Of a stretch of 64,000 bases of DNA, positions 17,346 to 47,003 are shown piece by piece (positions within the stretch are counted from its first letter, which is position 1; each line of letters opens with the position of its first letter). The translations under genes were made by a program, and so were the position numbers. The notes below the pieces were generated by a model, which searched no databases, was not told the DNA's origin, and saw nothing but the letters and a program-made list of their open reading frames with translations. Location of the stretch: positions 124,001 through 188,000 of the IMG/VR virus record IMGVR_UViG_3300020172_001601; one strand, 5' to 3'.

Positions 17346-17654
17346 ATGATACAAGCCTGCCCAAACTGCGGTCATGCCCTTCAGCGTGAATTGAAGGATG
17401 GCCTTACACATTGCTCCCATTGCAATCAAGTTTTTGATTCAAGCGATTTTAATCGTCTTTTATCAGCCGCTTGGCAAATACGCAGGGAGCATTTGTCGTT
17501 AGAACAAGTTAAATGGCAATGTAAATTGGGAGACGATTATTCCATATTGATATACACATTTGTCAGTGAATACGGCTATGCCCACGATGAGTTAATCAAA
17601 TTGTTGCGAAAACTCGGTGTGGCAAATAAAGCGTATATCGACTTCTCAGCCTAG
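17346..17654 (+). CDS. zinc-ribbon hypothetical protein
   Basis: CPNCG..CSHC. Confidence 0.7.
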   Translation: MIQACPNCGHALQRELKDGLTHCSHCNQVFDSSDFNRLLSAAWQIRREHLSLEQVKWQCKLGDDYSILIYTFVSEYGYAHDELIKLLRKLGVANKAYIDFSA

Positions 17655-17700
17655 ATCGAGCATTGCGGCTTTGGTATCCTCTTATTTCTGGAGGATAACT

Positions 17701-18204
17701 ATGAAGCTGCAAGTTCTCGTCGGGATGATCGCATCAGGTAAATCAACATATTGCCGATCTGCTGCTAGGCAGGGCATCATTTGTGTAAACGATGATGCCA
17801 TTGTCAATATGCTTCATGCCGACGACTATACCCTCTATGACACCGATCTCAAGGTGTTGTATAAGTCTGTCGAAAATCACGTTATTGGAACCGGCCTCGC
17901 TATGGGCCGTTCAGTCATTGTTGATCGTGGACTCAACATGAGTCTTGCCGGTCGGCGTCGTTGGTTGGCCTTGGCTCAAAGTTTTGATGTGCCATGTGAA
18001 GCCATCGTTTTCAAAAATGACGGACCAGAAGAACACGCTCGTCGTCGCACTCAATCTGATGGTCGAGGCCACACCTGGGAGTATTGGCTTAGGGTTGCAG
18101 AGCTTCATAATTCCTTGTATATTCCACCTACTAAAGAAGAGGGCTTTGATGCCGTCTACGATATTGGGTTTGATGAAATACAGCAAGGCAAAGTCATTCT
18201 TTAA
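17701..18204 (+). CDS. AAA_33 / polynucleotide kinase-like P-loop protein
   Basis: VLVGMIASGKSTY; VIVD..N..R. Confidence 0.8.
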   Translation: MKLQVLVGMIASGKSTYCRSAARQGIICVNDDAIVNMLHADDYTLYDTDLKVLYKSVENHVIGTGLAMGRSVIVDRGLNMSLAGRRRWLALAQSFDVPCEAIVFKNDGPEEHARRRTQSDGRGHTWEYWLRVAELHNSLYIPPTKEEGFDAVYDIGFDEIQQGKVIL

Positions 18205-30432: not shown

Positions 30433-30684
30433 GTGATGGATAGTGTAGAACAAAAAGTAAAACAAACGATTTGTGATTGTTTGTGCGTCGAGTTGGACGC
30501 CATAGAGGATAATTCAGTTAGGTTAAGCGAACTGGAAGCAGACTCGCTTGACTTACTTGACCTTGAGTTTCAACTCGATAAGCAATTCGACGGCAAGTTG
30601 ATTAACGAAATGACCGTCTCTGTGGAGACGACGATTCAAGACGTAATCAACTTTGTCAGGACGGAAATCGGGCCGGTAGCTTAG
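30433..30684 (+). CDS. acpP: acyl carrier protein
   Basis: acidic 83 aa protein with the EADSLDLLDL phosphopantetheine site. Confidence 0.85.
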   Translation: MMDSVEQKVKQTICDCLCVELDAIEDNSVRLSELEADSLDLLDLEFQLDKQFDGKLINEMTVSVETTIQDVINFVRTEIGPVA

Positions 30685-30742
30685 TGACTAAAGCAGCTTG
30701 CTCATAACGAGTTGATCGTGGGTTTGAGTCCCACCCGGCCCA
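30670..30742 (+). tRNA. tRNA with anticodon CAT (probably Ile2), possibly degenerate
   Basis: GGGCCGG/CCGGCCC acceptor, GCTT/AAGC D stem, loop CTCATAA, GTGGG/CCCAC T stem; D-loop GG and TTC altered; no encoded CCA. Confidence 0.75.
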
Positions 30743-30756
30743 CTAGGAAAAATAAA

Positions 30757-34763: not shown

Positions 34764-35192
34764 ATGAGATTGTGGTCTTTGAATCCTGCTCTTTTAGACC
34801 CCAAAGGGCTTGTCGCATTGTGGCGAGAAGGGCTGCTGGCTCAAAATGTTTTGATGAACAAAACAAAGGGCTATAAGTTTCATCCTCAATTGGAACGATT
34901 CAAAAGAACAAATAATCCAGTGGCTTCGATTGATTTGTATTTAAGTTATGTTTTGGAAGAGTCCAGAAATAGAGGTTATTCATTCAACGCCTCTAAATTG
35001 AGTGCGAATGACACACAGCCTAAAATAGAAGTGACCATTGGACAAATGCTTTACGAGATAGAGCATTTGAAAAACAAGTTAAGACTTCGTAATGAGAAGT
35101 TTCTTGACAAGATACCGAGTGCATTGGCCGATTGCGTTCATCCAATTTTTCAGTTGGTTCCTGGCGACGTAGAACCCTGGGAAAAGGTTTGA
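34764..35192 (+). CDS. pyrimidine dimer DNA glycosylase / endonuclease V family
   Basis: MRLWSL..LDPKGLVALWREGLLAQ..KGYKFHPQLERF. Confidence 0.9.
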   Translation: MRLWSLNPALLDPKGLVALWREGLLAQNVLMNKTKGYKFHPQLERFKRTNNPVASIDLYLSYVLEESRNRGYSFNASKLSANDTQPKIEVTIGQMLYEIEHLKNKLRLRNEKFLDKIPSALADCVHPIFQLVPGDVEPWEKV

Positions 35193-35230
35193 GTTTTACG
35201 TTTTGACGTTTTTGTGGTATGGTTAGTATC

Positions 35231-35890
35231 ATGAGCCATTTTCACAAATATCCTCGAACGTATCATCTGCCGTGGAGTCCTGGTGGGACTTCTGATGATC
35301 GCACATTGCCCAATGTGAAGCACTTCGAGGGTTTGGAAATCGTCGTCACGGAGAAGTTGGACGGAGAAAACACGTCCATGTACTCCGATCACATTCACGC
35401 ACGATCTCTTGATTCCAAGCACCATCCTTCTCGAACTTGGGTCAAGGTGTTGCACGGCCAGTTAAGTCATGAACTTCCTCCTGGTTGGAGGATTTGTGGC
35501 GAAAACGTGTATGCCTTGCATTCAATTCAATACACCAAGCTGGAAGGCTATTTCTACGTTTTCGGAATATACGACGACAAGAATCAATGCTTGTCGTGGG
35601 ACGAAACTGTGGAATATGCAACCATGCTCAATCTGCCGGTTGCCCCGGTCCTATATCGTGGGCCTTGGAATGAGGCAAAGGTCAAAGCCTGCTGGACAGG
35701 CATTTCTACTGCATCCCCAGGCGATCAACAGGAAGGCTATGTTCTGCGAGTGGCGCAGACATTCCCGTATGACGCTCAAGATGATGGGCTATTTTCACAA
35801 TACACTGCCAAATATGTCCGGGCCGAGCATGTCCAGACTGATGAGCATTGGCTTGAAAAGCCCGTGGTGCCGAACTTGCTAAGGAAATAA
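35231..35890 (+). CDS. RNA ligase family protein (Rnl2-like adenylation domain)
   Basis: KYPRTYHLPWSPG, TEKLDGEN, ICGEN, EGYVLR, AKYVR. Confidence 0.85.
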   Translation: MSHFHKYPRTYHLPWSPGGTSDDRTLPNVKHFEGLEIVVTEKLDGENTSMYSDHIHARSLDSKHHPSRTWVKVLHGQLSHELPPGWRICGENVYALHSIQYTKLEGYFYVFGIYDDKNQCLSWDETVEYATMLNLPVAPVLYRGPWNEAKVKACWTGISTASPGDQQEGYVLRVAQTFPYDAQDDGLFSQYTAKYVRAEHVQTDEHWLEKPVVPNLLRK

Positions 35891-36768: not shown

Positions 36769-36913
36769 CTTTACAATCAGACTTTTTCGTGGTAAAAATA
36801 TCCACGTCAAAAGCCGGATATTCGATATATTCGGCTAAAGTCTGATTGTGGTCTGCCGATATAACTTTCACCAGCAACTACAAACTACTTTCACCGAACT
36901 AGGAACCACTTAT

Positions 36914-38539
36914 ATGTCGAAGAAACTTGGAAAATCTGCCTATCCTGCTGGTCATGGCCCGAATGACTTTCAATGCTTCGGCCCGCCTGCTCTTGAAGAT
37001 GGCAACTTCGACACCTGCAAGATCGCCGATATGGGATCATTCTCGCAGGAAGAAAAGGACTCCAACAAGTATTACCACGCCTCTGTGGTGAAGTCCAAAA
37101 TCAGTGGCACTTTCTACACCTACTTCGAGTGGGGCCGAGTCGGTGCTTCTTCGCCTCAATTCCAAATGATTGAGTGTGCCAACGAAGCTGAAGCGCAGCG
37201 TGAATTCGCCGCTCAGTGTCATGAGAAGAACGACAAGCGTGGCGTATGGTCCACGGTTGCTGGCCTTCGCACTCTCACCGCCAAGCCGGGCAAAGACGTG
37301 TATCTGGTTCGTCAGTTGACGACCCGCAGCACTGGTCTGCCTGATGCCAAAACCATCAAGTATGTCGATCCCAATACTCCGAAGAAGCCTGATCCTAAAG
37401 CGGCTTCCGGTTCTGCTGGCGTTGTGAAGTCGGCTGCAAAGAAGGCTGATACTCACACCAGTCGATTGCTACAAGACCTGATTGGTGGAACGATCAAATA
37501 CACCCGTTCGGCGATGGCCGACAATAGCCTACCTACGCAGACGGCTATTGACCAAGCCCGCACCATTCTCACCGAGGCTCAGAAGCGTGTTGGCACTGTG
37601 GGTGATGACTTAGACGACCAGATTGGCGACAAAGAACTTCGGGTATATTCGTCCGAATTGTATCGTCGCATTCCGAAGGTCAAGGCAGTCGGTACGCCGG
37701 ACAGCGTGTGGATTCTGAGCGGCAACAATATCCTTTCCTGGCAACAGGACTTGGATGCCTTCGAGTCGGCATTGACTGGCCAAGCCCAAGTCGAAACTGA
37801 CAGTGAAACCGATCCGTTCCACGGTCTGCCTCTTCACATGGAGTGGATCGACCCCAAGAGCGATCTTGGCAAATTCCTCACCTTCTGGTGGCCGAAGGCG
37901 ACGGCAAATCGTCACGGTCATATTGGGACGATGAAGATCAAGAATCTGTGGAAGGTGGATCGTCACGGTGATGACGAGAAGTTCACCAAGACGCAGGATA
38001 AGATTTATTCCGAAATCGGCGGGGCCAAGATCAGCGAACGTCCGCTGTTCCAGCCTAGCGAACGACATGACGTTGACCCTAAGCGTCGTGAAGTATTCAG
38101 TGGTTCCAATACAGCCTTGTTGTTCCACGGAACTCGCTCCGTCAACGTGAAGGGCATTTTGGAGAAGTCACTGTTGCTTCCGAAGCAACTGGTCGGTGTC
38201 GCCATCAATGGTGCTATGTTCGGGCCGGGACTGTATTGGGCTGATGACTGGAAGAAGTCGGCGGGATATACGTCTCTCCGTGGCTCGATCTGGTCGGGTG
38301 GTGGCGGTTCGGTTGCAGGTCGTGCAGCGTTCATGTTCGCTGCTGACGTGACTGTTGGCGAGCCTCACGTTGCTCCTGGGCCTCGTGGTTATACTGCCCC
38401 GCCGAAGGGTACTCACTGTATCTTTGGTATGGGTCGCAACCACGGCAAGAAGCAATACAGTGGCGTCGAGAACAACGAATGGATCGTGTTCCAGAATACA
38501 CAAAGCCGTCTCAAATACCTTTGTGAATTTGAGACGTAA
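36914..38539 (+). CDS. poly(ADP-ribose) polymerase-like protein (WGR, regulatory and catalytic domains)
   Basis: FEWGRVG; SSELYRRIP; LLFHGT..GAMFGPGLYWAD..KSAGY..NNEWIVF (H-Y-E triad). Confidence 0.9.
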   Translation: MSKKLGKSAYPAGHGPNDFQCFGPPALEDGNFDTCKIADMGSFSQEEKDSNKYYHASVVKSKISGTFYTYFEWGRVGASSPQFQMIECANEAEAQREFAAQCHEKNDKRGVWSTVAGLRTLTAKPGKDVYLVRQLTTRSTGLPDAKTIKYVDPNTPKKPDPKAASGSAGVVKSAAKKADTHTSRLLQDLIGGTIKYTRSAMADNSLPTQTAIDQARTILTEAQKRVGTVGDDLDDQIGDKELRVYSSELYRRIPKVKAVGTPDSVWILSGNNILSWQQDLDAFESALTGQAQVETDSETDPFHGLPLHMEWIDPKSDLGKFLTFWWPKATANRHGHIGTMKIKNLWKVDRHGDDEKFTKTQDKIYSEIGGAKISERPLFQPSERHDVDPKRREVFSGSNTALLFHGTRSVNVKGILEKSLLLPKQLVGVAINGAMFGPGLYWADDWKKSAGYTSLRGSIWSGGGGSVAGRAAFMFAADVTVGEPHVAPGPRGYTAPPKGTHCIFGMGRNHGKKQYSGVENNEWIVFQNTQSRLKYLCEFET

Positions 38540-39683: not shown

Positions 39684-41351
39684 ATGAGCGATGAAGTCAT
39701 TACACTGTCGAGGGACGAATTCGAGGAAATCAAGGGCCAACTGGTTTTCCTTGATGCCGAATTGTCCCGCCTTATGGCACAACCTTTGGTGTACGCCACG
39801 GTTGTCAAGGCAGACAACAAGTTCAATCTGGAGGTTTTCGAGCAGGGCGACCGAATGCTCGTGATCGACAAAGAACTTCGCAAGCAGAAGAAGTTCTACG
39901 GCAAGATCGCATCTGCCGGTGTCGATGAAGACGGTTGGGTGATTCTGGAATATCCTACGGGCGGGCGTGACCGATTGAATATCGGCCTCAAGACCGAACT
40001 ACCGCAGGTTAAGTTGCTCGGCAAGGACGACGGCATGAATGTCGTCATCACCTTCGACGGGAAGCTGTTCGAGGTTCACGGTCTGCCCGGTGTCTTCTTC
40101 AAGCCTTCCGAAAACGTGAAGGTTGACATGGAGACGAAGCAGATTCACTCCAGCACGGGCGTCAGCAGCGCCGGTGACGTGGTTTACATCAAGTCCATCG
40201 TGGACGAGAATCACGTTGAAGTCGAAAGCAATGGCAGCAATCGTGTTGTCATCTTCGGCCTCGATCAGAAGATCGAACCAAGTGACCGTGTGATGTTGGA
40301 TAATTCCAACACGGTTATCCTTCGGGTGTTGGAACGTGACGGCAAGGATCGTTTCAACCTGACGGAAAATTCCGACACACAATGGTCTGATATTGCCGGG
40401 TTGGATGACGCCAAGGAACAACTGATCGAGGCGTTGGAAACTCCGTACAAGAACCCGGAGATTTACAAGTTCTACGGCATGGCCCCTCCGAAGGGTGTCC
40501 TGTTGTATGGACCGCAGGGTTGTGGGAAGACTTTGACCGCCAAGGCAGCAGCGGCTTCGCTGGCTCGCACACACGGTTCGGAGAACTTCCAGTCGGGATT
40601 CATCTACGTCAAGGGACCGGAACTCCTGTCCAAGTGGGTTGGTCAGACCGAACAAGAAATTCGTGGTCTGTTCACCCGTGGTCGGGAACACTTCCAGAAG
40701 CACGGCTATCCGGCCTTGCTGTTCATTGACGAAGCTGATGCCCTTCTGCCGATGAGAGGGACTGGCAAGAGCAGCGACGTGGAGAACACCATCGTCCCGC
40801 AGTTCTTGTCGGAAATGGACGGGTTGGAAGCGTCGGGTGTGATGGTTCTGTTGGCTACAAACCAACCGAAGCGTCTGGACCCAGCGGTTGTTCGTGAAGG
40901 TCGTATAGACCGTCACGTTAAGATCAGCCGTCCGAACGAAAAGAATGCCATCGAATACTTCCGCATTCACATGAGAGGTATGCCGTTGGCGAAGGGTGTG
41001 GAACCGGAAGAAGTGGCGAACCTCGCTGCTGCTGAAATCTTCCATGCTCAACGGGCGCTTTACCGTGTGACTCACCGTCAGACGGCAGAAATCTTCCGTC
41101 TGGCTGACGCCGTGACGGGAGCGATGATTGCTGGAGTGGTGGCGCAGGCCAAGTCCATCGCCATGAAGCGAGACTTGGCAAAGGGTGGCAAGCCGAAGGG
41201 TGTGTTGCCTGAAGACTTCGCTGTTTCGGTGAACAACCACTACATTCAGCACGCCGACCTGAACGCCACGTTCGATCTGGAAGACTTCTGTGATCGACTC
41301 GGCTTCGACCGGAAGTCGGTGAATGTCGAGAAGTTGGCTGTTGCCAAGTAA
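39684..41351 (+). CDS. ARC/Mpa-like AAA+ ATPase
   Basis: N-terminal coiled coil and OB-like region; KGVLLYGPQGCGKT, KGPELLSKWVG, FIDEAD, SSDVENTIVPQFLSEMDG, LDPAVVREGRID, VTGAMI. Confidence 0.85.
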   Translation: MSDEVITLSRDEFEEIKGQLVFLDAELSRLMAQPLVYATVVKADNKFNLEVFEQGDRMLVIDKELRKQKKFYGKIASAGVDEDGWVILEYPTGGRDRLNIGLKTELPQVKLLGKDDGMNVVITFDGKLFEVHGLPGVFFKPSENVKVDMETKQIHSSTGVSSAGDVVYIKSIVDENHVEVESNGSNRVVIFGLDQKIEPSDRVMLDNSNTVILRVLERDGKDRFNLTENSDTQWSDIAGLDDAKEQLIEALETPYKNPEIYKFYGMAPPKGVLLYGPQGCGKTLTAKAAAASLARTHGSENFQSGFIYVKGPELLSKWVGQTEQEIRGLFTRGREHFQKHGYPALLFIDEADALLPMRGTGKSSDVENTIVPQFLSEMDGLEASGVMVLLATNQPKRLDPAVVREGRIDRHVKISRPNEKNAIEYFRIHMRGMPLAKGVEPEEVANLAAAEIFHAQRALYRVTHRQTAEIFRLADAVTGAMIAGVVAQAKSIAMKRDLAKGGKPKGVLPEDFAVSVNNHYIQHADLNATFDLEDFCDRLGFDRKSVNVEKLAVAK

Positions 41352-41383
41352 TTGGTTGCAGTAAAAACGTAAAGTTACTTATG

Positions 41384-41423
41384 CTGCCCGGTCATCGTGG
41401 GGATGACCGGGCAGTTGTTGTTT
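41384..41423 (+). terminator. intrinsic terminator
   Basis: ctgcccggtcatc/gatgaccgggcag stem. Confidence 0.7.
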
Positions 41424-41456
41424 ACAGAACTCGTTTTTTGGGGTAGAATCCTCATC

Positions 41457-42863
41457 ATGTTCACTTTATCGGAAGCATACGAAGCATTAAATGGTCACGA
41501 CGAGTTTGCCGTAAAGGTTTACGACGGCAAGGTTTCGTTCGACTACATCGTTATCTTTCCTGGGTCTTTCGACGCTACCGATGATGAAATCCGACACCGT
41601 GCTTATCTCCTGTGGGAGCAAGCTGGTGGTCCGGTCGTGGACTCTGCACAATTCTGGTTTCAGGCAGAGCGAGACATTAAGCGTTTTGCTCATCTTCGTC
41701 GCAATTTTCGTGGCGTTACGTTTGACGTAGCGACCGGCGAAATGATCTCGCTGCCTCTTCACAAGTTTTTCAACGTCAACCAAATTCCAGAAACTCAATA
41801 TGATGTTATCAAGCATCATGATGCTGTTATCTATGAGAAGATGGATGGGACGATGATTCACTTCTTCCTACACAATGGGAAGTTAGAAGCTGCAACCTGC
41901 CGTTCGACTCATCACCCGCTCGCACATGAGGCGTTGGCGTTGGCGAAGAAGAACCGTATTGATGGGATGATTGTTGATACCATCAAGAACGGTTGGACTC
42001 CAATCTTTGAATATGTTGCTCCACACAATCAAGTTGTGGTTCAATATGCCGAGCCACGTTTGGTGCATCTGGTATCCCGTGAACGCAAGTCAGGAAAGTA
42101 TCATTACGATGATTCTTTTCCTGATAAGGCACGTCGTTTTGAATTCAAGTTTGGTCAGGTTTTCAATAACCTCGATCATACTGAGTTCGAGGGATATGTT
42201 TGTCATTTACCAAACATGGTCGTCAAGGCAAAGACTCCTTGGTACATGGAACGTCACCGGGCTGTTGATGCTTTGATGCGCCCGGCGTACAAGTTATACA
42301 AAATCGTATTCGATGGGTTGATGGACGACTTGATCGCCATCGCCACCGAGCCGTACAAGCCAGCGCTTCGTAAGGTATACGAAGAGGCTCAACGTGATCT
42401 TCTGAACGAGAAGAAGCGTGTAGAGGAACAATTTGCTGAGGCTGTGGAACTTTCCGAGAAGGCTCCGACTCTAACGGACGATCCAAATCCGTTGGCTGAT
42501 TTAGAGAAGGAAATCAATCTCCTGAAGGACCAGGGCAAGCGATTGGAGGCCATCAAGCGGGTTCGTGACTTCACGGGCCTTGGCTTGAGTGAAGCAAAGT
42601 CTTACGTTGAACGTGGTGTGTGGCCCCACGGTTTTATTCGACGTGATGAACAAGAGATTGAGGCTCGTCGGCTTATTCGCACCAAGGGCAGCTTCGCTGA
42701 TCTGGCTCGTGCAAAATATCCTGATGACTTCAACCTCATCATGGCTTTGTATCAAGGGCGTGATCCTAGCGATGGGATCAAAGAGCGGTTGATGGAGGTA
42801 TATCGTGTGAAATACCCTCAAAAACTTTACGCCAAACTTGATGATAACCATGAAGATGGGTAA
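41457..42863 (+). CDS. T4 Rnl1-like RNA ligase with DUF2934-like and L7/L12-CTD-like insertions
   Basis: RGVTFD..LPLHKFFN, YEKMDGTMI, TPIFEY, EGYV, KAKTPWY; EIRHRAYLLWEQAG..FWFQAERDI; LEAIKRVRDFTGLGLSEAKSYVE. Confidence 0.85.
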   Translation: MFTLSEAYEALNGHDEFAVKVYDGKVSFDYIVIFPGSFDATDDEIRHRAYLLWEQAGGPVVDSAQFWFQAERDIKRFAHLRRNFRGVTFDVATGEMISLPLHKFFNVNQIPETQYDVIKHHDAVIYEKMDGTMIHFFLHNGKLEAATCRSTHHPLAHEALALAKKNRIDGMIVDTIKNGWTPIFEYVAPHNQVVVQYAEPRLVHLVSRERKSGKYHYDDSFPDKARRFEFKFGQVFNNLDHTEFEGYVCHLPNMVVKAKTPWYMERHRAVDALMRPAYKLYKIVFDGLMDDLIAIATEPYKPALRKVYEEAQRDLLNEKKRVEEQFAEAVELSEKAPTLTDDPNPLADLEKEINLLKDQGKRLEAIKRVRDFTGLGLSEAKSYVERGVWPHGFIRRDEQEIEARRLIRTKGSFADLARAKYPDDFNLIMALYQGRDPSDGIKERLMEVYRVKYPQKLYAKLDDNHEDG

Positions 42864-42880
42864 CACATGGATGGCAACTC

Positions 42881-43159
42881 ATGGGAGCGACTATGCCGAA
42901 GTTCAAAGTTATGAGTGGTGAGTTTGAAGTCGTAGTGAACGAAAAGACGCTCCGCAAAGCAGGCGACTTGGCGATCCAGCTTCACAATAAGAGCAACCAT
43001 CCTAGCACGCTGGGAGAATTGACCTTGGTGGAAAAGCTGGATCGTCATAGTAGTCAGCCTACCGGAGATCACATCTTCATTTCTACACAAACATTGCTTG
43101 ATGAAAATACATCAGGCTTGGGCGAAAATACTGGTCAATACTCTCGCATCGAAGAATAG
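42881..43159 (+). CDS. hypothetical protein
   Basis: 92 aa ORF. Confidence 0.6.
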   Translation: MGATMPKFKVMSGEFEVVVNEKTLRKAGDLAIQLHNKSNHPSTLGELTLVEKLDRHSSQPTGDHIFISTQTLLDENTSGLGENTGQYSRIEE

Positions 43160-43167
43160 GAGCAGCA

Positions 43168-43836
43168 ATGTCAGAAATCAAAATCAATAGCGTGACAAAG
43201 GCGACCGACCTCCGTTGGCTCAATCTGTATAACGTCGATTATACATCGAAAGACGGAAAGCAAGGTCAATGGACATTCGCCAGTCGCAAGACTCCACAAC
43301 CGGCAGGCTCGCCCCTCGTGGCCGATGCTGTTGTGATTATCCCACTGCTGAAGGATGGTCGCAAACGGAAGCTGGTCAGCATCCGGGAATTCCGTATCCC
43401 CCTGGGAGACTATGAATATGGTTTCCCGGCTGGTCTTTATGACCATAACGAAACAGCCGAAGCTGTCGCCAAGCGTGAGTTGAAAGAAGAAACAGGACTC
43501 AAGCTGACAAAGGTTCTTTACGTCAGCCCGCCGTGTGTTTCTTCGGCTGGTCTTTCTGATGAGTCGGTAGTGTATGTCGTGTGTGAATGCACTGGAGAAG
43601 TCAGCAGTGCTGGCACTGAAGGATCGGAAGACATTAAGGTTGGACTGCTCGATATTGACGGGGTTCGGGCGCTTCGCCAGTCTCCCAACAAGATTTCGGC
43701 CAAGGCTATTACCTTTCTGCTCATGTTCGATGGGATGAACAAGATTGCATGGCCGAAGCACCTTCGCCAAGAACAACCCAAGAAGGCGAAAAAGGCAAAG
43801 CCGGAAGCTCTACAAACGGCTGATCCTGTGGTATGA
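43168..43836 (+). CDS. Nudix hydrolase, ADP-ribose pyrophosphatase (NudF)-like
   Basis: EFRIPLG..YGFPAGLYDHNETAEAVAKRELKEETG, SAGLSDE. Confidence 0.85.
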   Translation: MSEIKINSVTKATDLRWLNLYNVDYTSKDGKQGQWTFASRKTPQPAGSPLVADAVVIIPLLKDGRKRKLVSIREFRIPLGDYEYGFPAGLYDHNETAEAVAKRELKEETGLKLTKVLYVSPPCVSSAGLSDESVVYVVCECTGEVSSAGTEGSEDIKVGLLDIDGVRALRQSPNKISAKAITFLLMFDGMNKIAWPKHLRQEQPKKAKKAKPEALQTADPVV

Positions 43837-45806: not shown

Positions 45807-45996
45807 ACCTTGCAACCCTGACCATAATGGCGAATGTTTAGTGTGTGATGGCTGGCTGTCACATTGCGCACTAGACAGATTGCGAGCGGGCGACTTCAAG
45901 TATGAAACCTTGGATGAACTGCTGGTAATGTTCAAGGATTTCTTAACAGAAGACGAAGTTCGCAATTTACGAACACAATACGGAACAAACAAATGA
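45793..45996 (+). CDS. hypothetical protein
   Basis: small Cys-containing ORF. Confidence 0.55.
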   Translation: MDANKPCNPDHNGECLVCDGWLSHCALDRLRAGDFKYETLDELLVMFKDFLTEDEVRNLRTQYGTNK

Positions 45997-47003
45997 TTAC
46001 CCTAAAAGATAAAGTCCGAGGCAATTTCCTGGGTGTCGCTATTGGCGATGCACTCGGCAAGCCAGTTGAAATGTGCAAACCTCAGCATATTGCTGAGAAG
46101 TATGGTCGCATTGAAGACTACCAAAACTGTAGTTCTCACAAGTATTTCGAGAACGACCATAAAGGCACCACGACCGACGACTGGCAGCTTACCAAGGCCG
46201 TTGCTCGTGCCATGATTACGACCGGCAAGTTCGATCTGGACGAGATTGCTGTTGAACACGGTAAGGAATTCGCAATCAGCGTTCGTGGCTGGGGCGGCTC
46301 AACCAGAGAAGCTGTTGCTCGTATTGTTGAAGGAATTCACTGGAAAGAGGCTGGCAAGACCACCGAGAAGAATCGAGGCTTGGGCAACGGCGTTTCCATG
46401 AAGGCGTCACCAGCGGGGCTTTATATGGCCCTGACGAATCCAAGCTGTGACAACCCGCCTTGGGACGATCATGTGAAGAATATCGCTGATATGGCGATTA
46501 TGACGCACTACACGAGTATTGCAGTGACGAGTGGTCTGGCTCATGCCTTCGCCACGCTGAAGTGTTTCAGTGTCACCCCTGAAACCTTCGACCCTGATTC
46601 GTTCGTGAATGTCGTTATTGGCGCTGCTCAGATCGGACGCCAGTATTGTCCTGGGACGCTCAATGACGATATGCAGGTTCGTTTTGAGCGATTGAAGAAG
46701 CCATATACCCCGCAGGGCATTATTGACCCAGATGAGTTCGGCGGTGGCTCCTGCTATGTCTACGACAGCTTGCCGTTTACATACGCATGGTTCCTTCGCA
46801 ATCCACAAAGCATCGAAAGTCTGTATGACTGTGTGAGTGCTGGTGGTGACGCTGACAGTAATGGCTCGATGCTGGCTGGGCTATTGGGAGCATTGCACGG
46901 TGCAAGCATTTTCCCGGATCATCTGGTTGATGGGCTGAAGAATAAAGACGAGGTTCTGGAGATCGCCGACCAGTTTTACGAGAAATTTGCCAAGTCGAAG
47001 TGA
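45993..47003 (+). CDS. ADP-ribosylglycohydrolase (DraG/ARH family)
   Basis: AIGDALGKPVE, TTDDWQL, GNGVSMK, GGDADSNGSMLAGLLGA. Confidence 0.92.
   Translation: MITLKDKVRGNFLGVAIGDALGKPVEMCKPQHIAEKYGRIEDYQNCSSHKYFENDHKGTTTDDWQLTKAVARAMITTGKFDLDEIAVEHGKEFAISVRGWGGSTREAVARIVEGIHWKEAGKTTEKNRGLGNGVSMKASPAGLYMALTNPSCDNPPWDDHVKNIADMAIMTHYTSIAVTSGLAHAFATLKCFSVTPETFDPDSFVNVVIGAAQIGRQYCPGTLNDDMQVRFERLKKPYTPQGIIDPDEFGGGSCYVYDSLPFTYAWFLRNPQSIESLYDCVSAGGDADSNGSMLAGLLGALHGASIFPDHLVDGLKNKDEVLEIADQFYEKFAKSK

What the first reader, a model, noticed from the sequence alone, without database searches (positions are those of the whole stretch)
41457..42863. Rnl1-type RNA ligase carrying a DUF2934-like insert and a ribosomal L7/L12 CTD-like module
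A DUF2934-like helix pair (about 41580-41680) is inserted before the ligase core, and an L7/L12-CTD-like motif (about 42525-42611, LEAIKRVRDFTGLGLSEAKSYVE) is inserted in the C-terminal helical domain. Established: the L12 CTD recruits translational GTPases. Inference: the ligase is targeted to EF-Tu/EF-G or the ribosome to repair tRNA or rRNA in place.
Basis: partly seen in the sequence, partly recalled or inferred. Interest (0 to 1): 0.6.

Follow-up and report, generated by a model that had tools for sequence, protein, structure and literature searches.

The report
Phage RNA ligase with two plug-in helices
A huge phage's tRNA-repair-type RNA ligase carries two small inserted helical modules, one copied from the factor-binding hairpin of ribosomal protein L12; the inserts are real and conserved, but what they bind is untested.

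Summary
ORF 41457-42863 (+, 468 aa) is an Rnl1-family RNA ligase with every catalytic residue intact. It lies in a 340-kb IMG/VR virus record.

- **Insert 1:** aa 41-75 score as DUF2934 (33.9 bits against a cut-off of 22).
- **Insert 2:** aa 357-386 score as Ribosomal_L12 (26.0 against 25.9). A profile of 37 homologous inserts hits solved bL12 at E 7e-9.

Both pieces are true insertions. Relatives and a Caulobacter-phage outgroup have 8 aa and about 30 aa at the two sites.

The interpretation needs trimming. Only the bL12 helix 4-helix 5 hairpin is present. [quoted passage not shown] It sits in an all-helical insert with no L12 C-terminal-domain fold.

Both modules recur in other small proteins of the same phage. 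They were gained and lost repeatedly within the ligase lineage. They are as conserved as the catalytic domain.

bL12 pieces embedded in larger phage proteins are already known (Mizuno 2019). In what I read, a fusion to Rnl1 is not described.

Docking to EF-Tu or another translational GTPase is the best guess, at about 0.35. A complex prediction gave no verdict. Nothing supports ribosome anchoring, because the L10-binding N-terminal domain is absent.

Verdict: new variant of a known kind, moderate interest.

The parts
41457..42863 (+). Rnl1-family RNA ligase gene, 468 aa, TAA stop
   Evidence: T4 Rnl1 is the best solved relative by sequence (E 1.2e-20) and by fold (Foldseek E 2e-16). AF2 model mean pLDDT 92.8.
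41574..41696 (+). Insert 1 (aa 40-80): DUF2934-type helix pair (helices aa 42-55 and 64-81) inside the N-terminal sub-domain, ending just before R81/R82/R85
   Evidence: Pfam DUF2934 at aa 41-75, 33.9 bits against cut-off 22. Helices. Relatives have 8-26 aa at this site.
41706..42188 (+). Nucleotidyltransferase core. The motif I lysine K128 (KMDG) is at nt 41838-41840. E185, E245/G246 and K257/K259 are also present.
   Evidence: Pfam RNA_lig_T4_1 at aa 84-244. Residue-by-residue alignment to T4 Rnl1. These residues are invariant in 109 relatives.
42468..42701 (+). Insert 2 (about aa 338-415) in the C-terminal helical domain: linker, lead helix 345-358, hairpin, conserved loop, and the start of the long helix 395-420
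   Evidence: The site holds 27-40 aa in short-form relatives and about 100 aa here. All-helical in the AF2 models. The linkers are variable (pairwise identity 0.35-0.40).
42540..42614 (+). bL12 helix 4-helix 5 hairpin (aa 362-386, RLEAIKRVRDFTGLGLSEAKSYVER)
   Evidence: Pfam Ribosomal_L12 positions 7-36 of 67. Insert profile against PDB bL12, E 7e-9. A365, I366, K367 and R370 are at least 90% conserved.
42615..42638 (+). Conserved GVWPHGFI loop (aa 387-394) that follows the hairpin
   Evidence: Pairwise identity 0.73, the highest of any segment measured. P390 is nearly invariant. A matching VWPAG follows the hairpin in a second protein of the same phage.
41383..41415 (+). Terminator-like 14-bp hairpin between the AAA ATPase gene and the ligase gene
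   Evidence: Consensus scan only; sequence.
41421..41449 (+). Promoter-like site (TTTACA, 17 nt, TAGAAT) ending 8 nt before the ATG
   Evidence: Consensus scan only, 10 of 12 matches. One site was found where shuffles give 2.6 on average, so this is weak.
39684..41351 (+). Conserved upstream neighbour: AAA+ ATPase with a weak proteasomal-ATPase OB match (context, not part of the ligase)
   Evidence: Pfam. It sits directly upstream of the ligase in three related contigs of 420-673 kb; in the fourth an 80-aa ORF lies between them.
42881..43836 (+). Conserved downstream neighbours: a 92-aa ORF with no family match, then a Nudix hydrolase (context)
   Evidence: Pfam. The same order is seen in three related contigs; in the fourth the small ORF is 138 aa.

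Best explanation
**Shown.** The gene encodes an active-looking Rnl1-type ATP-dependent RNA ligase of a huge phage. T4 Rnl1, the type enzyme, reseals tRNA anticodon loops cut by host nucleases. Two short helical modules have been spliced into surface sites of this ligase.
- A DUF2934 helix pair sits in the N-terminal sub-domain.
- The helix 4-helix 5 hairpin of ribosomal protein bL12, plus a conserved WPHGF loop, sits in the C-terminal domain. In T4 that domain sets tRNA specificity.
- Both modules are reused in other small proteins of the same phage.
- Both were gained within this phage lineage and sometimes lost again.
- Both are under purifying selection.

**Inferred.** The modules are portable docking adaptors, not parts of the catalytic machinery. 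The bL12 hairpin keeps the surface residues that bL12 (and the look-alike hairpin of EF-Ts) use to bind EF-Tu and other translational GTPases. It therefore most likely tethers the ligase to a host translational GTPase. EF-Tu, which carries tRNA, is the most attractive candidate because it would raise the local concentration of the ligase's substrate. The partner of the DUF2934 module is unknown.
For: **Ligase identity.**
- Family scans; fold match.
- The equivalents of T4 R54, K75, F76, K99, E159, E227, G228, K240 and K242 are R85, K103, F104, K128, E185, E245, G246, K257 and K259. All are invariant in 109 relatives.
- The roles of R54, K75 and F76, and of the C-domain, are taken from PMC6379707.

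**Inserts.**

**Portability.**
- A second L12 hairpin followed by VWPxG occurs in a small ORF of the same record. It is 40% identical over 53 aa, pairwise E 3e-12.
- DUF2934 occurs in three further ORFs of the record.
- A related 532-kb phage has a full bL12 homologue, a hairpin-only small protein and three DUF2934 ORFs, while its ligase lacks the L12 insert.

**Gain and loss.**
- The insert 2 state changes at least 7 times on a tree of 109 ligases built without the insert columns.
- P0019, P0022 and P0036, nested among insert-bearing sequences, lack insert 2. In P0019 a clean 45-aa gap marks its place.

**Selection.**
- Pairwise identity is 0.62 for the DUF2934 hairpin, 0.57 for the L12 hairpin and 0.73 for the WPHGF loop. 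The NTase domain scores 0.66 and the linkers 0.35-0.40.
- The factor-contact positions are conserved: R/K362, hydrophobic 363, I366, K367, R370, L377, E/D379 and K381.

**Charge.** The inserts are near neutral or slightly acidic, which is not what a nucleic-acid clamp would show.

**Literature.**
- 'EF-Tu-binding alpha-hairpin of EF-Ts and L7/12' (PMC4739770).
- bL12 domains inside larger phage proteins, with the contact residues kept (PMC6375957).
- The insert profile also touches the EF-Ts N-terminus marginally (E 0.03).
Against: - There is no direct evidence of binding. The complex prediction with E. coli EF-Tu gave no verdict.
- The conserved hairpin residues are also the ones that define the Pfam model. 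Some may simply pack against the ligase body. I had no model coordinates to check exposure.
- The hairpin is out of its native alpha/beta context, so its binding surface may be altered.
- bL12-factor contacts are weak and transient even on the ribosome.
- Close relatives do without the insert.
- The host is unknown.
- The only experimental test of an embedded phage bL12 domain gave one peptide in 70S preparations, and affinity purification failed (PMC6375957).
Confidence: 0.35

Rival explanations
1. The inserts retune substrate recognition directly. The hairpin and its WPHGF loop, placed in the C-terminal domain that gives T4 Rnl1 its tRNA specificity, contact the broken tRNA or another RNA. 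The DUF2934 pair, next to the ATP-gamma-phosphate residue R85, forms a lid over the active-site entrance.
For: - Insert 2 lies in the domain responsible for tRNA specificity in T4 (PMC6379707).
- Insert 1 ends three residues before R85.
- The hairpin carries a small net positive charge (+1.4 on average), with invariant K367 and R370.
- Both sites are insertion hot-spots with many lengths. One unrelated 109-aa insert (P0118) occupies site 2, as expected of a specificity loop.
Against: - Insert 2 as a whole is neutral, insert 1 is acidic and the whole protein is acidic.
- The same modules occur in small proteins with no recognisable RNA enzyme domain.
- The hairpin has no known RNA-binding role in bL12.
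Confidence: 0.25
2. The modules are phage-internal tags. Proteins carrying a DUF2934 pair or an L12-type hairpin are brought together with a common phage partner or compartment. Candidates include the conserved neighbouring AAA+ ATPase or a phage-made bL12 or stalk-like factor.
For: - Four DUF2934 ORFs and two hairpin ORFs occur in one record.
- Similar counts are seen in a related 532-kb phage that also encodes a full bL12 homologue.
- The ligase hairpin is closer to the phage's own small protein than to the phage bL12.
- Synteny with the AAA+ ATPase is conserved.
Against: - The synteny is the same in relatives without the inserts.
- No shared partner is known.
- DUF2934 is a family whose function no paper I found describes.
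Confidence: 0.2
3. The inserts are tolerated decorations with a structural or stabilising role only. Their family matches reflect common ancestry of small stable helix pairs and carry no function over.
For: - The L12 insert has been lost in close relatives with an otherwise intact enzyme.
- The insert has no recognisable fold match beyond generic helices.
Against: - The modules are conserved as strongly as the catalytic domain, while their own linkers drift.
- The WPHGF loop and the hairpin positions K367 and R370 (surface positions in bL12; their exposure here was not checked) are nearly invariant.
Confidence: 0.12

Closest known systems
Bacteriophage T4 RNA ligase 1 (RnlA, gp63; PDB 2C5U, 5TT6, 9DO4)
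   Same: - It has the same two-domain plan: an adenylyltransferase with the Rnl1-specific N-terminal sub-domain, plus an all-helical C-domain.
- All catalytic and ATP-contact residues are the same.
- It is the best structural match.
- The family's known biology is tRNA anticodon-loop repair (PMC6379707).
   Different: - This protein is 468 aa; the T4 chain in PDB 2C5U is 375 aa.
- Identity is about 19% in the structural alignment.
- It has about 35 extra residues before the R54-equivalent strand (DUF2934) and about 70 extra residues in the C-domain (bL12 hairpin).
- No T4-type Pnkp was seen next to it. A stand-alone AAA_33 kinase lies 24 kb upstream in the window.
bL12 domains embedded in larger phage proteins (Mizuno et al. 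2019, PMC6375957), for example the 418-aa Salmonella phage FSL SP-076 protein
   Same: - A piece of the bL12 C-terminal domain sits inside a larger, unrelated phage protein.
- Homologues specifically lack it.
- The factor-contact residues are kept.
- Acquisition was repeated (compared).
   Different: - The host protein here is an identified enzyme, Rnl1.
- Only helices 4 and 5 are present, in an all-helical setting.
- The carrier is a huge phage; the cultivated examples in that paper were under 80 kb.
- The word 'ligase' does not occur in that paper's main text.
[quoted passage not shown] 2001, cited in PMC4739770)
   Same: - It has the same helix-GxG-helix sequence signature, hhK.VR..TGhGh.EAK..h.
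- The hairpin is already known to work in two different folds. The insert profile hits bL12 strongly and EF-Ts marginally.
   Different: This would be a third structural context. EF-Tu binding has not been shown here.
DUF2934 (Pfam PF11154)
   Same: It scores above the curated cut-off, with the typical RAY.LWE..G.P.G....FW.QAE pattern.
   Different: Here it is an internal insert in an enzyme. The family has no described function; five papers merely mention it.

Membership tests
Rnl1 (T4 RnlA) RNA ligase family | Covalent nucleotidyltransferase motifs: motif I KxDG lysine, motif III Glu, motif IV EG, motif V KxK | tested here: met
   K128-M-D130-G131, E185, E245-G246 and K257/K259 align to T4 K99, E159, E227/G228 and K240/K242. 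They are invariant in 109 relatives.
Rnl1 (T4 RnlA) RNA ligase family | [quoted passage not shown] | tested here: met
   R85, K103 and F104 align and are invariant. Their roles are from PMC6379707.
Rnl1 (T4 RnlA) RNA ligase family | Rnl1-type all-helical C-terminal domain | tested here: met
   The Foldseek alignment to 2C5U spans the whole protein (471 columns, E 2e-16). The conserved IMxLYQG segment aligns to T4 338-357. This holds apart from the about 70-aa insert.
Rnl1 (T4 RnlA) RNA ligase family | Curated family score thresholds | tested here: inconclusive
   Pfam PF09511 is passed (61.6 bits against 28.3). The NCBIfam equivalog TIGR02308 is not (82 bits against 242). This is a divergent member, not a T4 equivalog.
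Rnl1 (T4 RnlA) RNA ligase family | ATP-dependent sealing of 3'-OH and 5'-PO4 ends in a tRNA anticodon loop | not testable with these tools
   Needs an enzyme assay.
bL12 (L7/L12) C-terminal domain, Pfam PF00542 | Sequence match to the family model above the gathering score | tested here: met
   26.0 bits against 25.9 for the whole protein and 29.2 for the insert alone. Thirty-five of 37 insert homologues match. The insert profile hits 1dd3 at E 7e-9.
bL12 (L7/L12) C-terminal domain, Pfam PF00542 | The complete domain: three-stranded sheet packed by three helices, covering all 67 model positions | tested here: not met
   Only model positions 7-36 align. There are no strands in the insert in either AF2 model. 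No L12 C-terminal-domain match comes from Foldseek or VIA-align.
bL12 (L7/L12) ribosomal protein | N-terminal dimerisation and uL10-binding domain plus flexible hinge, which anchor it to the ribosome | tested here: not met
   Nothing of the kind is in the 468-aa protein. By contrast, the 155-aa full bL12 homologue of a related phage has a full-length C-terminal-domain match; its N-terminal part I judged bL12-like by eye only.
EF-Tu-binding alpha-hairpin (bL12 helices 4-5 / EF-Ts N-terminus) | Conserved contact residues (E. coli bL12 K65, V66, I69, K70, R73, L80, E82, K84) | tested here: met
   R/K362 in 31 of 36, hydrophobic 363 in 33 of 36, I366 in 34, K367 in 34, R370 in 33, L377 in 33, E/D379 in 29 and K381 in 31. 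The residue list itself is recalled from Kothe 2004 and Diaconu 2005 and was not re-read.
EF-Tu-binding alpha-hairpin (bL12 helices 4-5 / EF-Ts N-terminus) | Actual binding to EF-Tu or another translational GTPase | tested here: inconclusive
   The complex prediction gave no verdict. This needs biochemistry.
DUF2934 (PF11154) | Match above the gathering score over the whole 37-position model | tested here: met
   33.9 bits against 22, positions 2-36. The source database's own precomputed Pfam column lists PF11154 for most close relatives.

The most novel reading that the evidence does not exclude
The bL12-type hairpin is a portable 'factor-hook' that huge phages graft onto several of their own proteins. 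It would plug them into the host's pool of translational GTPases. On the ligase it would deliver tRNA repair to EF-Tu-bound or ribosome-proximal tRNA, so that repair is physically coupled to translation. DUF2934 would be a second hook of the same kind for a different, still unknown hub.
Probability: 0.15. Interest if true: 0.75.

Novelty: new variant of a known kind. Interest (0 to 1): 0.45.

Why it matters
**If the hairpin binds a translation factor.** This would be the first RNA-repair enzyme shown to be wired to the translation apparatus by a borrowed ribosomal-protein surface. It would also give a concrete function to the puzzling bL12 fragments scattered through phage proteins.

**Natural controls already exist.** Relatives about two-thirds identical have the insert cleanly deleted, so the experiment is ready to design.

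**An annotation warning.** One public source names this ligase and several relatives 'ribosomal protein L7/L12'. Counts of virus-encoded ribosomal proteins that rest on Pfam PF00542 hits will therefore include enzymes like this one.

**DUF2934.** The family gets a tractable setting: four copies in one phage, one of them inside an enzyme with a known assay.

Tried and rejected
- **Complex prediction.** The ligase C-domain (aa 296-468) with E. coli EF-Tu gave no verdict, score 0.09 against a mark of 0.34. This is not evidence either way.
- **Fold search with the insert alone.** Foldseek against the PDB found nothing at E below 1. VIA-align against 48,161 chains gave a best Z of 5.2 to generic helical pieces. 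I therefore dropped the idea that the insert is a compact L12 C-terminal-domain or UBA-like domain.
- **A guess about P0118.** By eye I thought its 109-aa insert at the same site was a fuller L12 C-terminal domain. I rejected this: no Pfam hit and no BLAST alignment to a phage bL12. It is an unrelated insert at the same hot-spot.
- **Searches that came back blank.**
  - Near-identical DNA in isolated phages.
  - tblastn of the insert against isolated phages.
  - Word search with the insert alone among proteins of 0.55-1.75 times its length. That length window means the blank says nothing about longer proteins.
- **Literature.** DUF2934 is only mentioned in passing in five papers. The jumbo-phage survey PMC7824862 never mentions L12.
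- **TAG recoding as an explanation of the suppressor tRNAs.** I rejected this for the window. Table 11 gives 91% coding coverage, and TAG ends 21 of 92 ORFs.
- **A phage-encoded EF-Tu-type GTPase.** I looked for one and found none in the 340-kb record.
Full report
**What is there.** The window is bases 124,001-188,000 of a 340,341-bp IMG/VR virus record that CheckV rates 69% complete. It is gene-dense: table 11 gives 91% coding coverage, mostly on the + strand.

The flagged ORF runs from ATG 41457 to TAA 42863 and gives 468 aa. A longer reading from GTG 41397 is possible. Two things argue against it. Homologues start with the same MFTL... sequence. A 14-bp terminator-like hairpin (41383-41415) and a promoter-like site (41421-41449) lie in that stretch; both are consensus matches only.

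**It is an Rnl1 ligase.**
- Pfam RNA_lig_T4_1 scores E 1.3e-16, PHROG 562 scores E 3e-47 and T4 Rnl1 structures score E 1e-20.
- The AF2 model built on 109 relatives has mean pLDDT 92.8. Its best fold match is T4 Rnl1, over both domains.
- Nine T4 residues align to R85, K103, F104, K128, E185, E245, G246, K257 and K259: Arg54, Lys75, Phe76, Lys99, Glu159, Glu227, Gly228, Lys240 and Lys242. All nine are invariant in the 109 relatives.
- PMC6379707 gives the roles of Arg54, Lys75 and Phe76. It also states that the T4 C-domain confers specificity for anticodon-loop breaks, and that tRNA repair is the enzyme's physiological job.
- The NCBIfam equivalog cut-off is not reached (82 bits against 242). 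This is a divergent family member.

**The two inserts are real.**
- DUF2934 matches aa 41-75 at 33.9 bits against a cut-off of 22. In the model this is a helix pair, aa 42-55 and 64-81.
- Ribosomal_L12 matches aa 357-386 at 26.0 bits against 25.9, covering model positions 7-36 of 67.
- In an alignment of 108 relatives, site 1 holds 8 aa in the shortest forms and 13, 16, 20, 26, 33-44 or 47 aa in others. Site 2 holds 27-40 aa or about 100 aa.
- The distant RnlA of Caulobacter phage CcrSC is short at both sites. The short state is therefore probably ancestral.

The marginal L12 score is backed by three further results.
- 35 of 37 homologous inserts match the family on their own.
- A profile of the inserts hits Thermotoga bL12 at E 7e-9 over residues 68-116.
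- The single protein hits Thermus bL12 at E 7e-5.

**What insert 2 is not.**
- In both AF2 models (whole protein, and insert alone at pLDDT 73) it is purely helical. The order is a lead helix (345-358), the two hairpin helices (362-373 and 377-386), a loop (387-394) and then the long helix 395-420.
- Foldseek and VIA-align searches with the insert alone return only generic helical matches. Neither returns an L12 C-terminal domain.
- So the beta-sheet and the third helix of the L12 C-terminal domain are missing. The N-terminal, ribosome-anchoring half of bL12 is missing too.
[quoted passage not shown] That unit is already known to sit in two different folds.
- The insert profile also touches the EF-Ts N-terminus, but only marginally (E 0.03).

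**Conservation.** Thirty-one ligases carry both inserts. Mean pairwise identity by segment:

| Segment | Identity |
|---|---|
| DUF2934 pair | 0.62 |
| L12 hairpin | 0.57 |
| GVWPHGFI loop | 0.73 |
| Nucleotidyltransferase domain | 0.66 |
| Linkers of insert 2 | 0.35-0.40 |

Within the hairpin, the positions matching E. coli bL12 contact residues are held in 29-34 of 36 sequences. Those residues are K65, V66, I69, K70, R73, L80, E82 and K84.
- The E. coli numbering and the role of these residues in factor binding come from my memory of Kothe et al. 2004 and Diaconu et al. 2005. Both papers are listed in PMC12179292. I did not re-read the residue list.
- Insert 2 is electrically neutral, insert 1 is slightly acidic and the whole protein is acidic.

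**The modules are portable.**
- In the same virus record a second hairpin occurs in a small ORF, followed by VWPAG. It is 40% identical to the ligase insert over 53 aa. That is closer than the ligase insert is to a phage bL12.
- DUF2934 occurs in three more ORFs: at the C-terminus of a 169-aa and a 105-aa protein, and at the N-terminus of a 366-aa protein.
- A related, complete 532-kb phage has a full 155-aa bL12 homologue, a hairpin-only small protein and three DUF2934 ORFs. Its ligase lacks the L12 insert.

**Gain and loss.** I built a tree of 109 ligases with the insert columns removed.
- The insert 2 state changes at least 7 times and the three-state insert 1 character at least 11 times.
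- It is a quick tree with midpoint rooting and several long branches. The counts are rough.
- Inside the well-supported 21-sequence clade that holds the window's protein, P0019, P0022 and P0036 lack insert 2. In P0019 a clean 45-residue gap marks its place.
- P0061 and P0062 have insert 2 without a DUF2934 pair.
- P0118 has an unrelated 109-aa insert at the same site.

**Context.**
- The gene order is: WGR-PARP, several ORFs, AAA+ ATPase, Rnl1, a small ORF, Nudix, several ORFs, ADP-ribosylglycohydrolase. Through the Nudix gene it recurs in four related contigs of 420-673 kb, whether or not the ligase carries the inserts; the glycohydrolase follows in three of them and was not seen within 8 kb in the fourth. 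So the ligase appears to be a long-standing part of this huge-phage lineage, and the inserts are later additions.
- An Rnl2-type ligase domain (35219-35890) and a stand-alone AAA_33 kinase (17617-18204) are also in the window.
- No EF-Tu-type GTPase is encoded in the 340-kb record. Any factor partner would have to come from the host.

**How it most likely works.** The ligase chemistry is standard. The inserts look like plug-in adaptors under selection.
- Best guess (about 0.35): the hairpin docks the enzyme to a host translational GTPase. EF-Tu is the most attractive candidate because it carries tRNA.
- Rival 1 (0.25): the inserts retune RNA recognition directly.
- Rival 2 (0.2): they tag the protein for a shared phage partner.
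- Rival 3 (0.12): they are merely structural.
- The complex prediction with E. coli EF-Tu gave no verdict and counts for nothing either way.

**Novelty.**
- Mizuno et al. 2019 already showed that phage bL12 domains often sit inside larger proteins, that homologues lack them and that they were acquired repeatedly. They suggested these domains might offer interfaces for translation factors (PMC6375957).
- Neither that paper nor the jumbo-phage survey mentions an RNA ligase carrying one.
- No isolated phage in the collection searched has the insert.
- One public source labels this protein family 'ribosomal protein L7/L12', which is a mis-annotation.
- I rate it a new variant of a known kind.

**Limits.**
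- I had no access to model coordinates, so exposure of the hairpin residues is inferred from helical periodicity only.
- The host is unknown.
- All relatives are metagenomic.

Noticed in passing
window 58011-58084 and 58708-58778 (+); also 30670-30743: Two tRNAs with anticodon CTA (amber suppressors; ARAGORN labels them tRNA-Pyl) and a tRNA-Met. Within this window TAG behaves as an ordinary stop: it ends 21 of 92 ORFs and table 11 gives 91% coding. Any TAG recoding would have to lie elsewhere in the genome or act on something else.
   Followed up: partly
window 36848-38539, 43168-43836, 45993-47003 (+): A eukaryote-style WGR + PARP catalytic protein, a Nudix hydrolase and an ADP-ribosylglycohydrolase flank the ligase. 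The PARP and Nudix genes flank it in four related 420-673 kb contigs, and the glycohydrolase follows in three of them. This looks like a conserved ADP-ribose / nucleic-acid-break module around an RNA ligase and may deserve its own look.
   Followed up: partly
window 39684-41351 (+): A 555-aa AAA+ ATPase with a weak match to the proteasomal-ATPase OB domain sits directly upstream of the ligase here and in three of the four related contigs examined; in the fourth an 80-aa ORF lies between them. Its function in a phage is unknown.
   Followed up: no
window 34764-35192 and 35219-35890 (+); 17617-18204 (+): Three further genes: a T4 endonuclease V-type pyrimidine-dimer glycosylase, a 223-aa Rnl2-type RNA_ligase domain protein with no C-terminal domain, and a stand-alone AAA_33 P-loop kinase that could serve as a 5' kinase. 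No phosphatase partner was looked for.
   Followed up: no
G000:C1 about 103.0-103.5 kb (L005:1216-1698), 119.2-119.5 kb (L007:1306-1623), 222.1-222.6 kb (L006:1105-1614), 61.2-62.3 kb (L009:1423-2523): These are the other carriers of the two modules in the same virus record: one small protein with the L12 hairpin followed by VWPAG, and three proteins with DUF2934 at an end. None has any other recognisable domain.
   Followed up: partly
L093:1243-1710 (+), in a related 532-kb IMG/VR record: A 155-aa protein with a full-length match to the L12 C-terminal domain (E 2.6e-21, all 67 positions). Its N-terminal part resembles the bL12 N-terminal domain by eye, with a linker between. It looks like a complete phage-encoded bL12 homologue and a possible donor of the hairpin modules.
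   Followed up: partly
protein family P0002, P0009, P0010, P0016, P0042: One public source names these RNA ligases 'ribosomal protein L7/L12'. This is an annotation error driven by the 30-residue hairpin. It could inflate counts of virus-encoded ribosomal proteins.
   Followed up: yes
window 41421-41449 (+): The promoter-like -10 element ends only 8 nt before the ligase ATG, which would give a nearly leaderless transcript. This is a consensus match only, and such matches are no more frequent here than in shuffled sequence.
   Followed up: no
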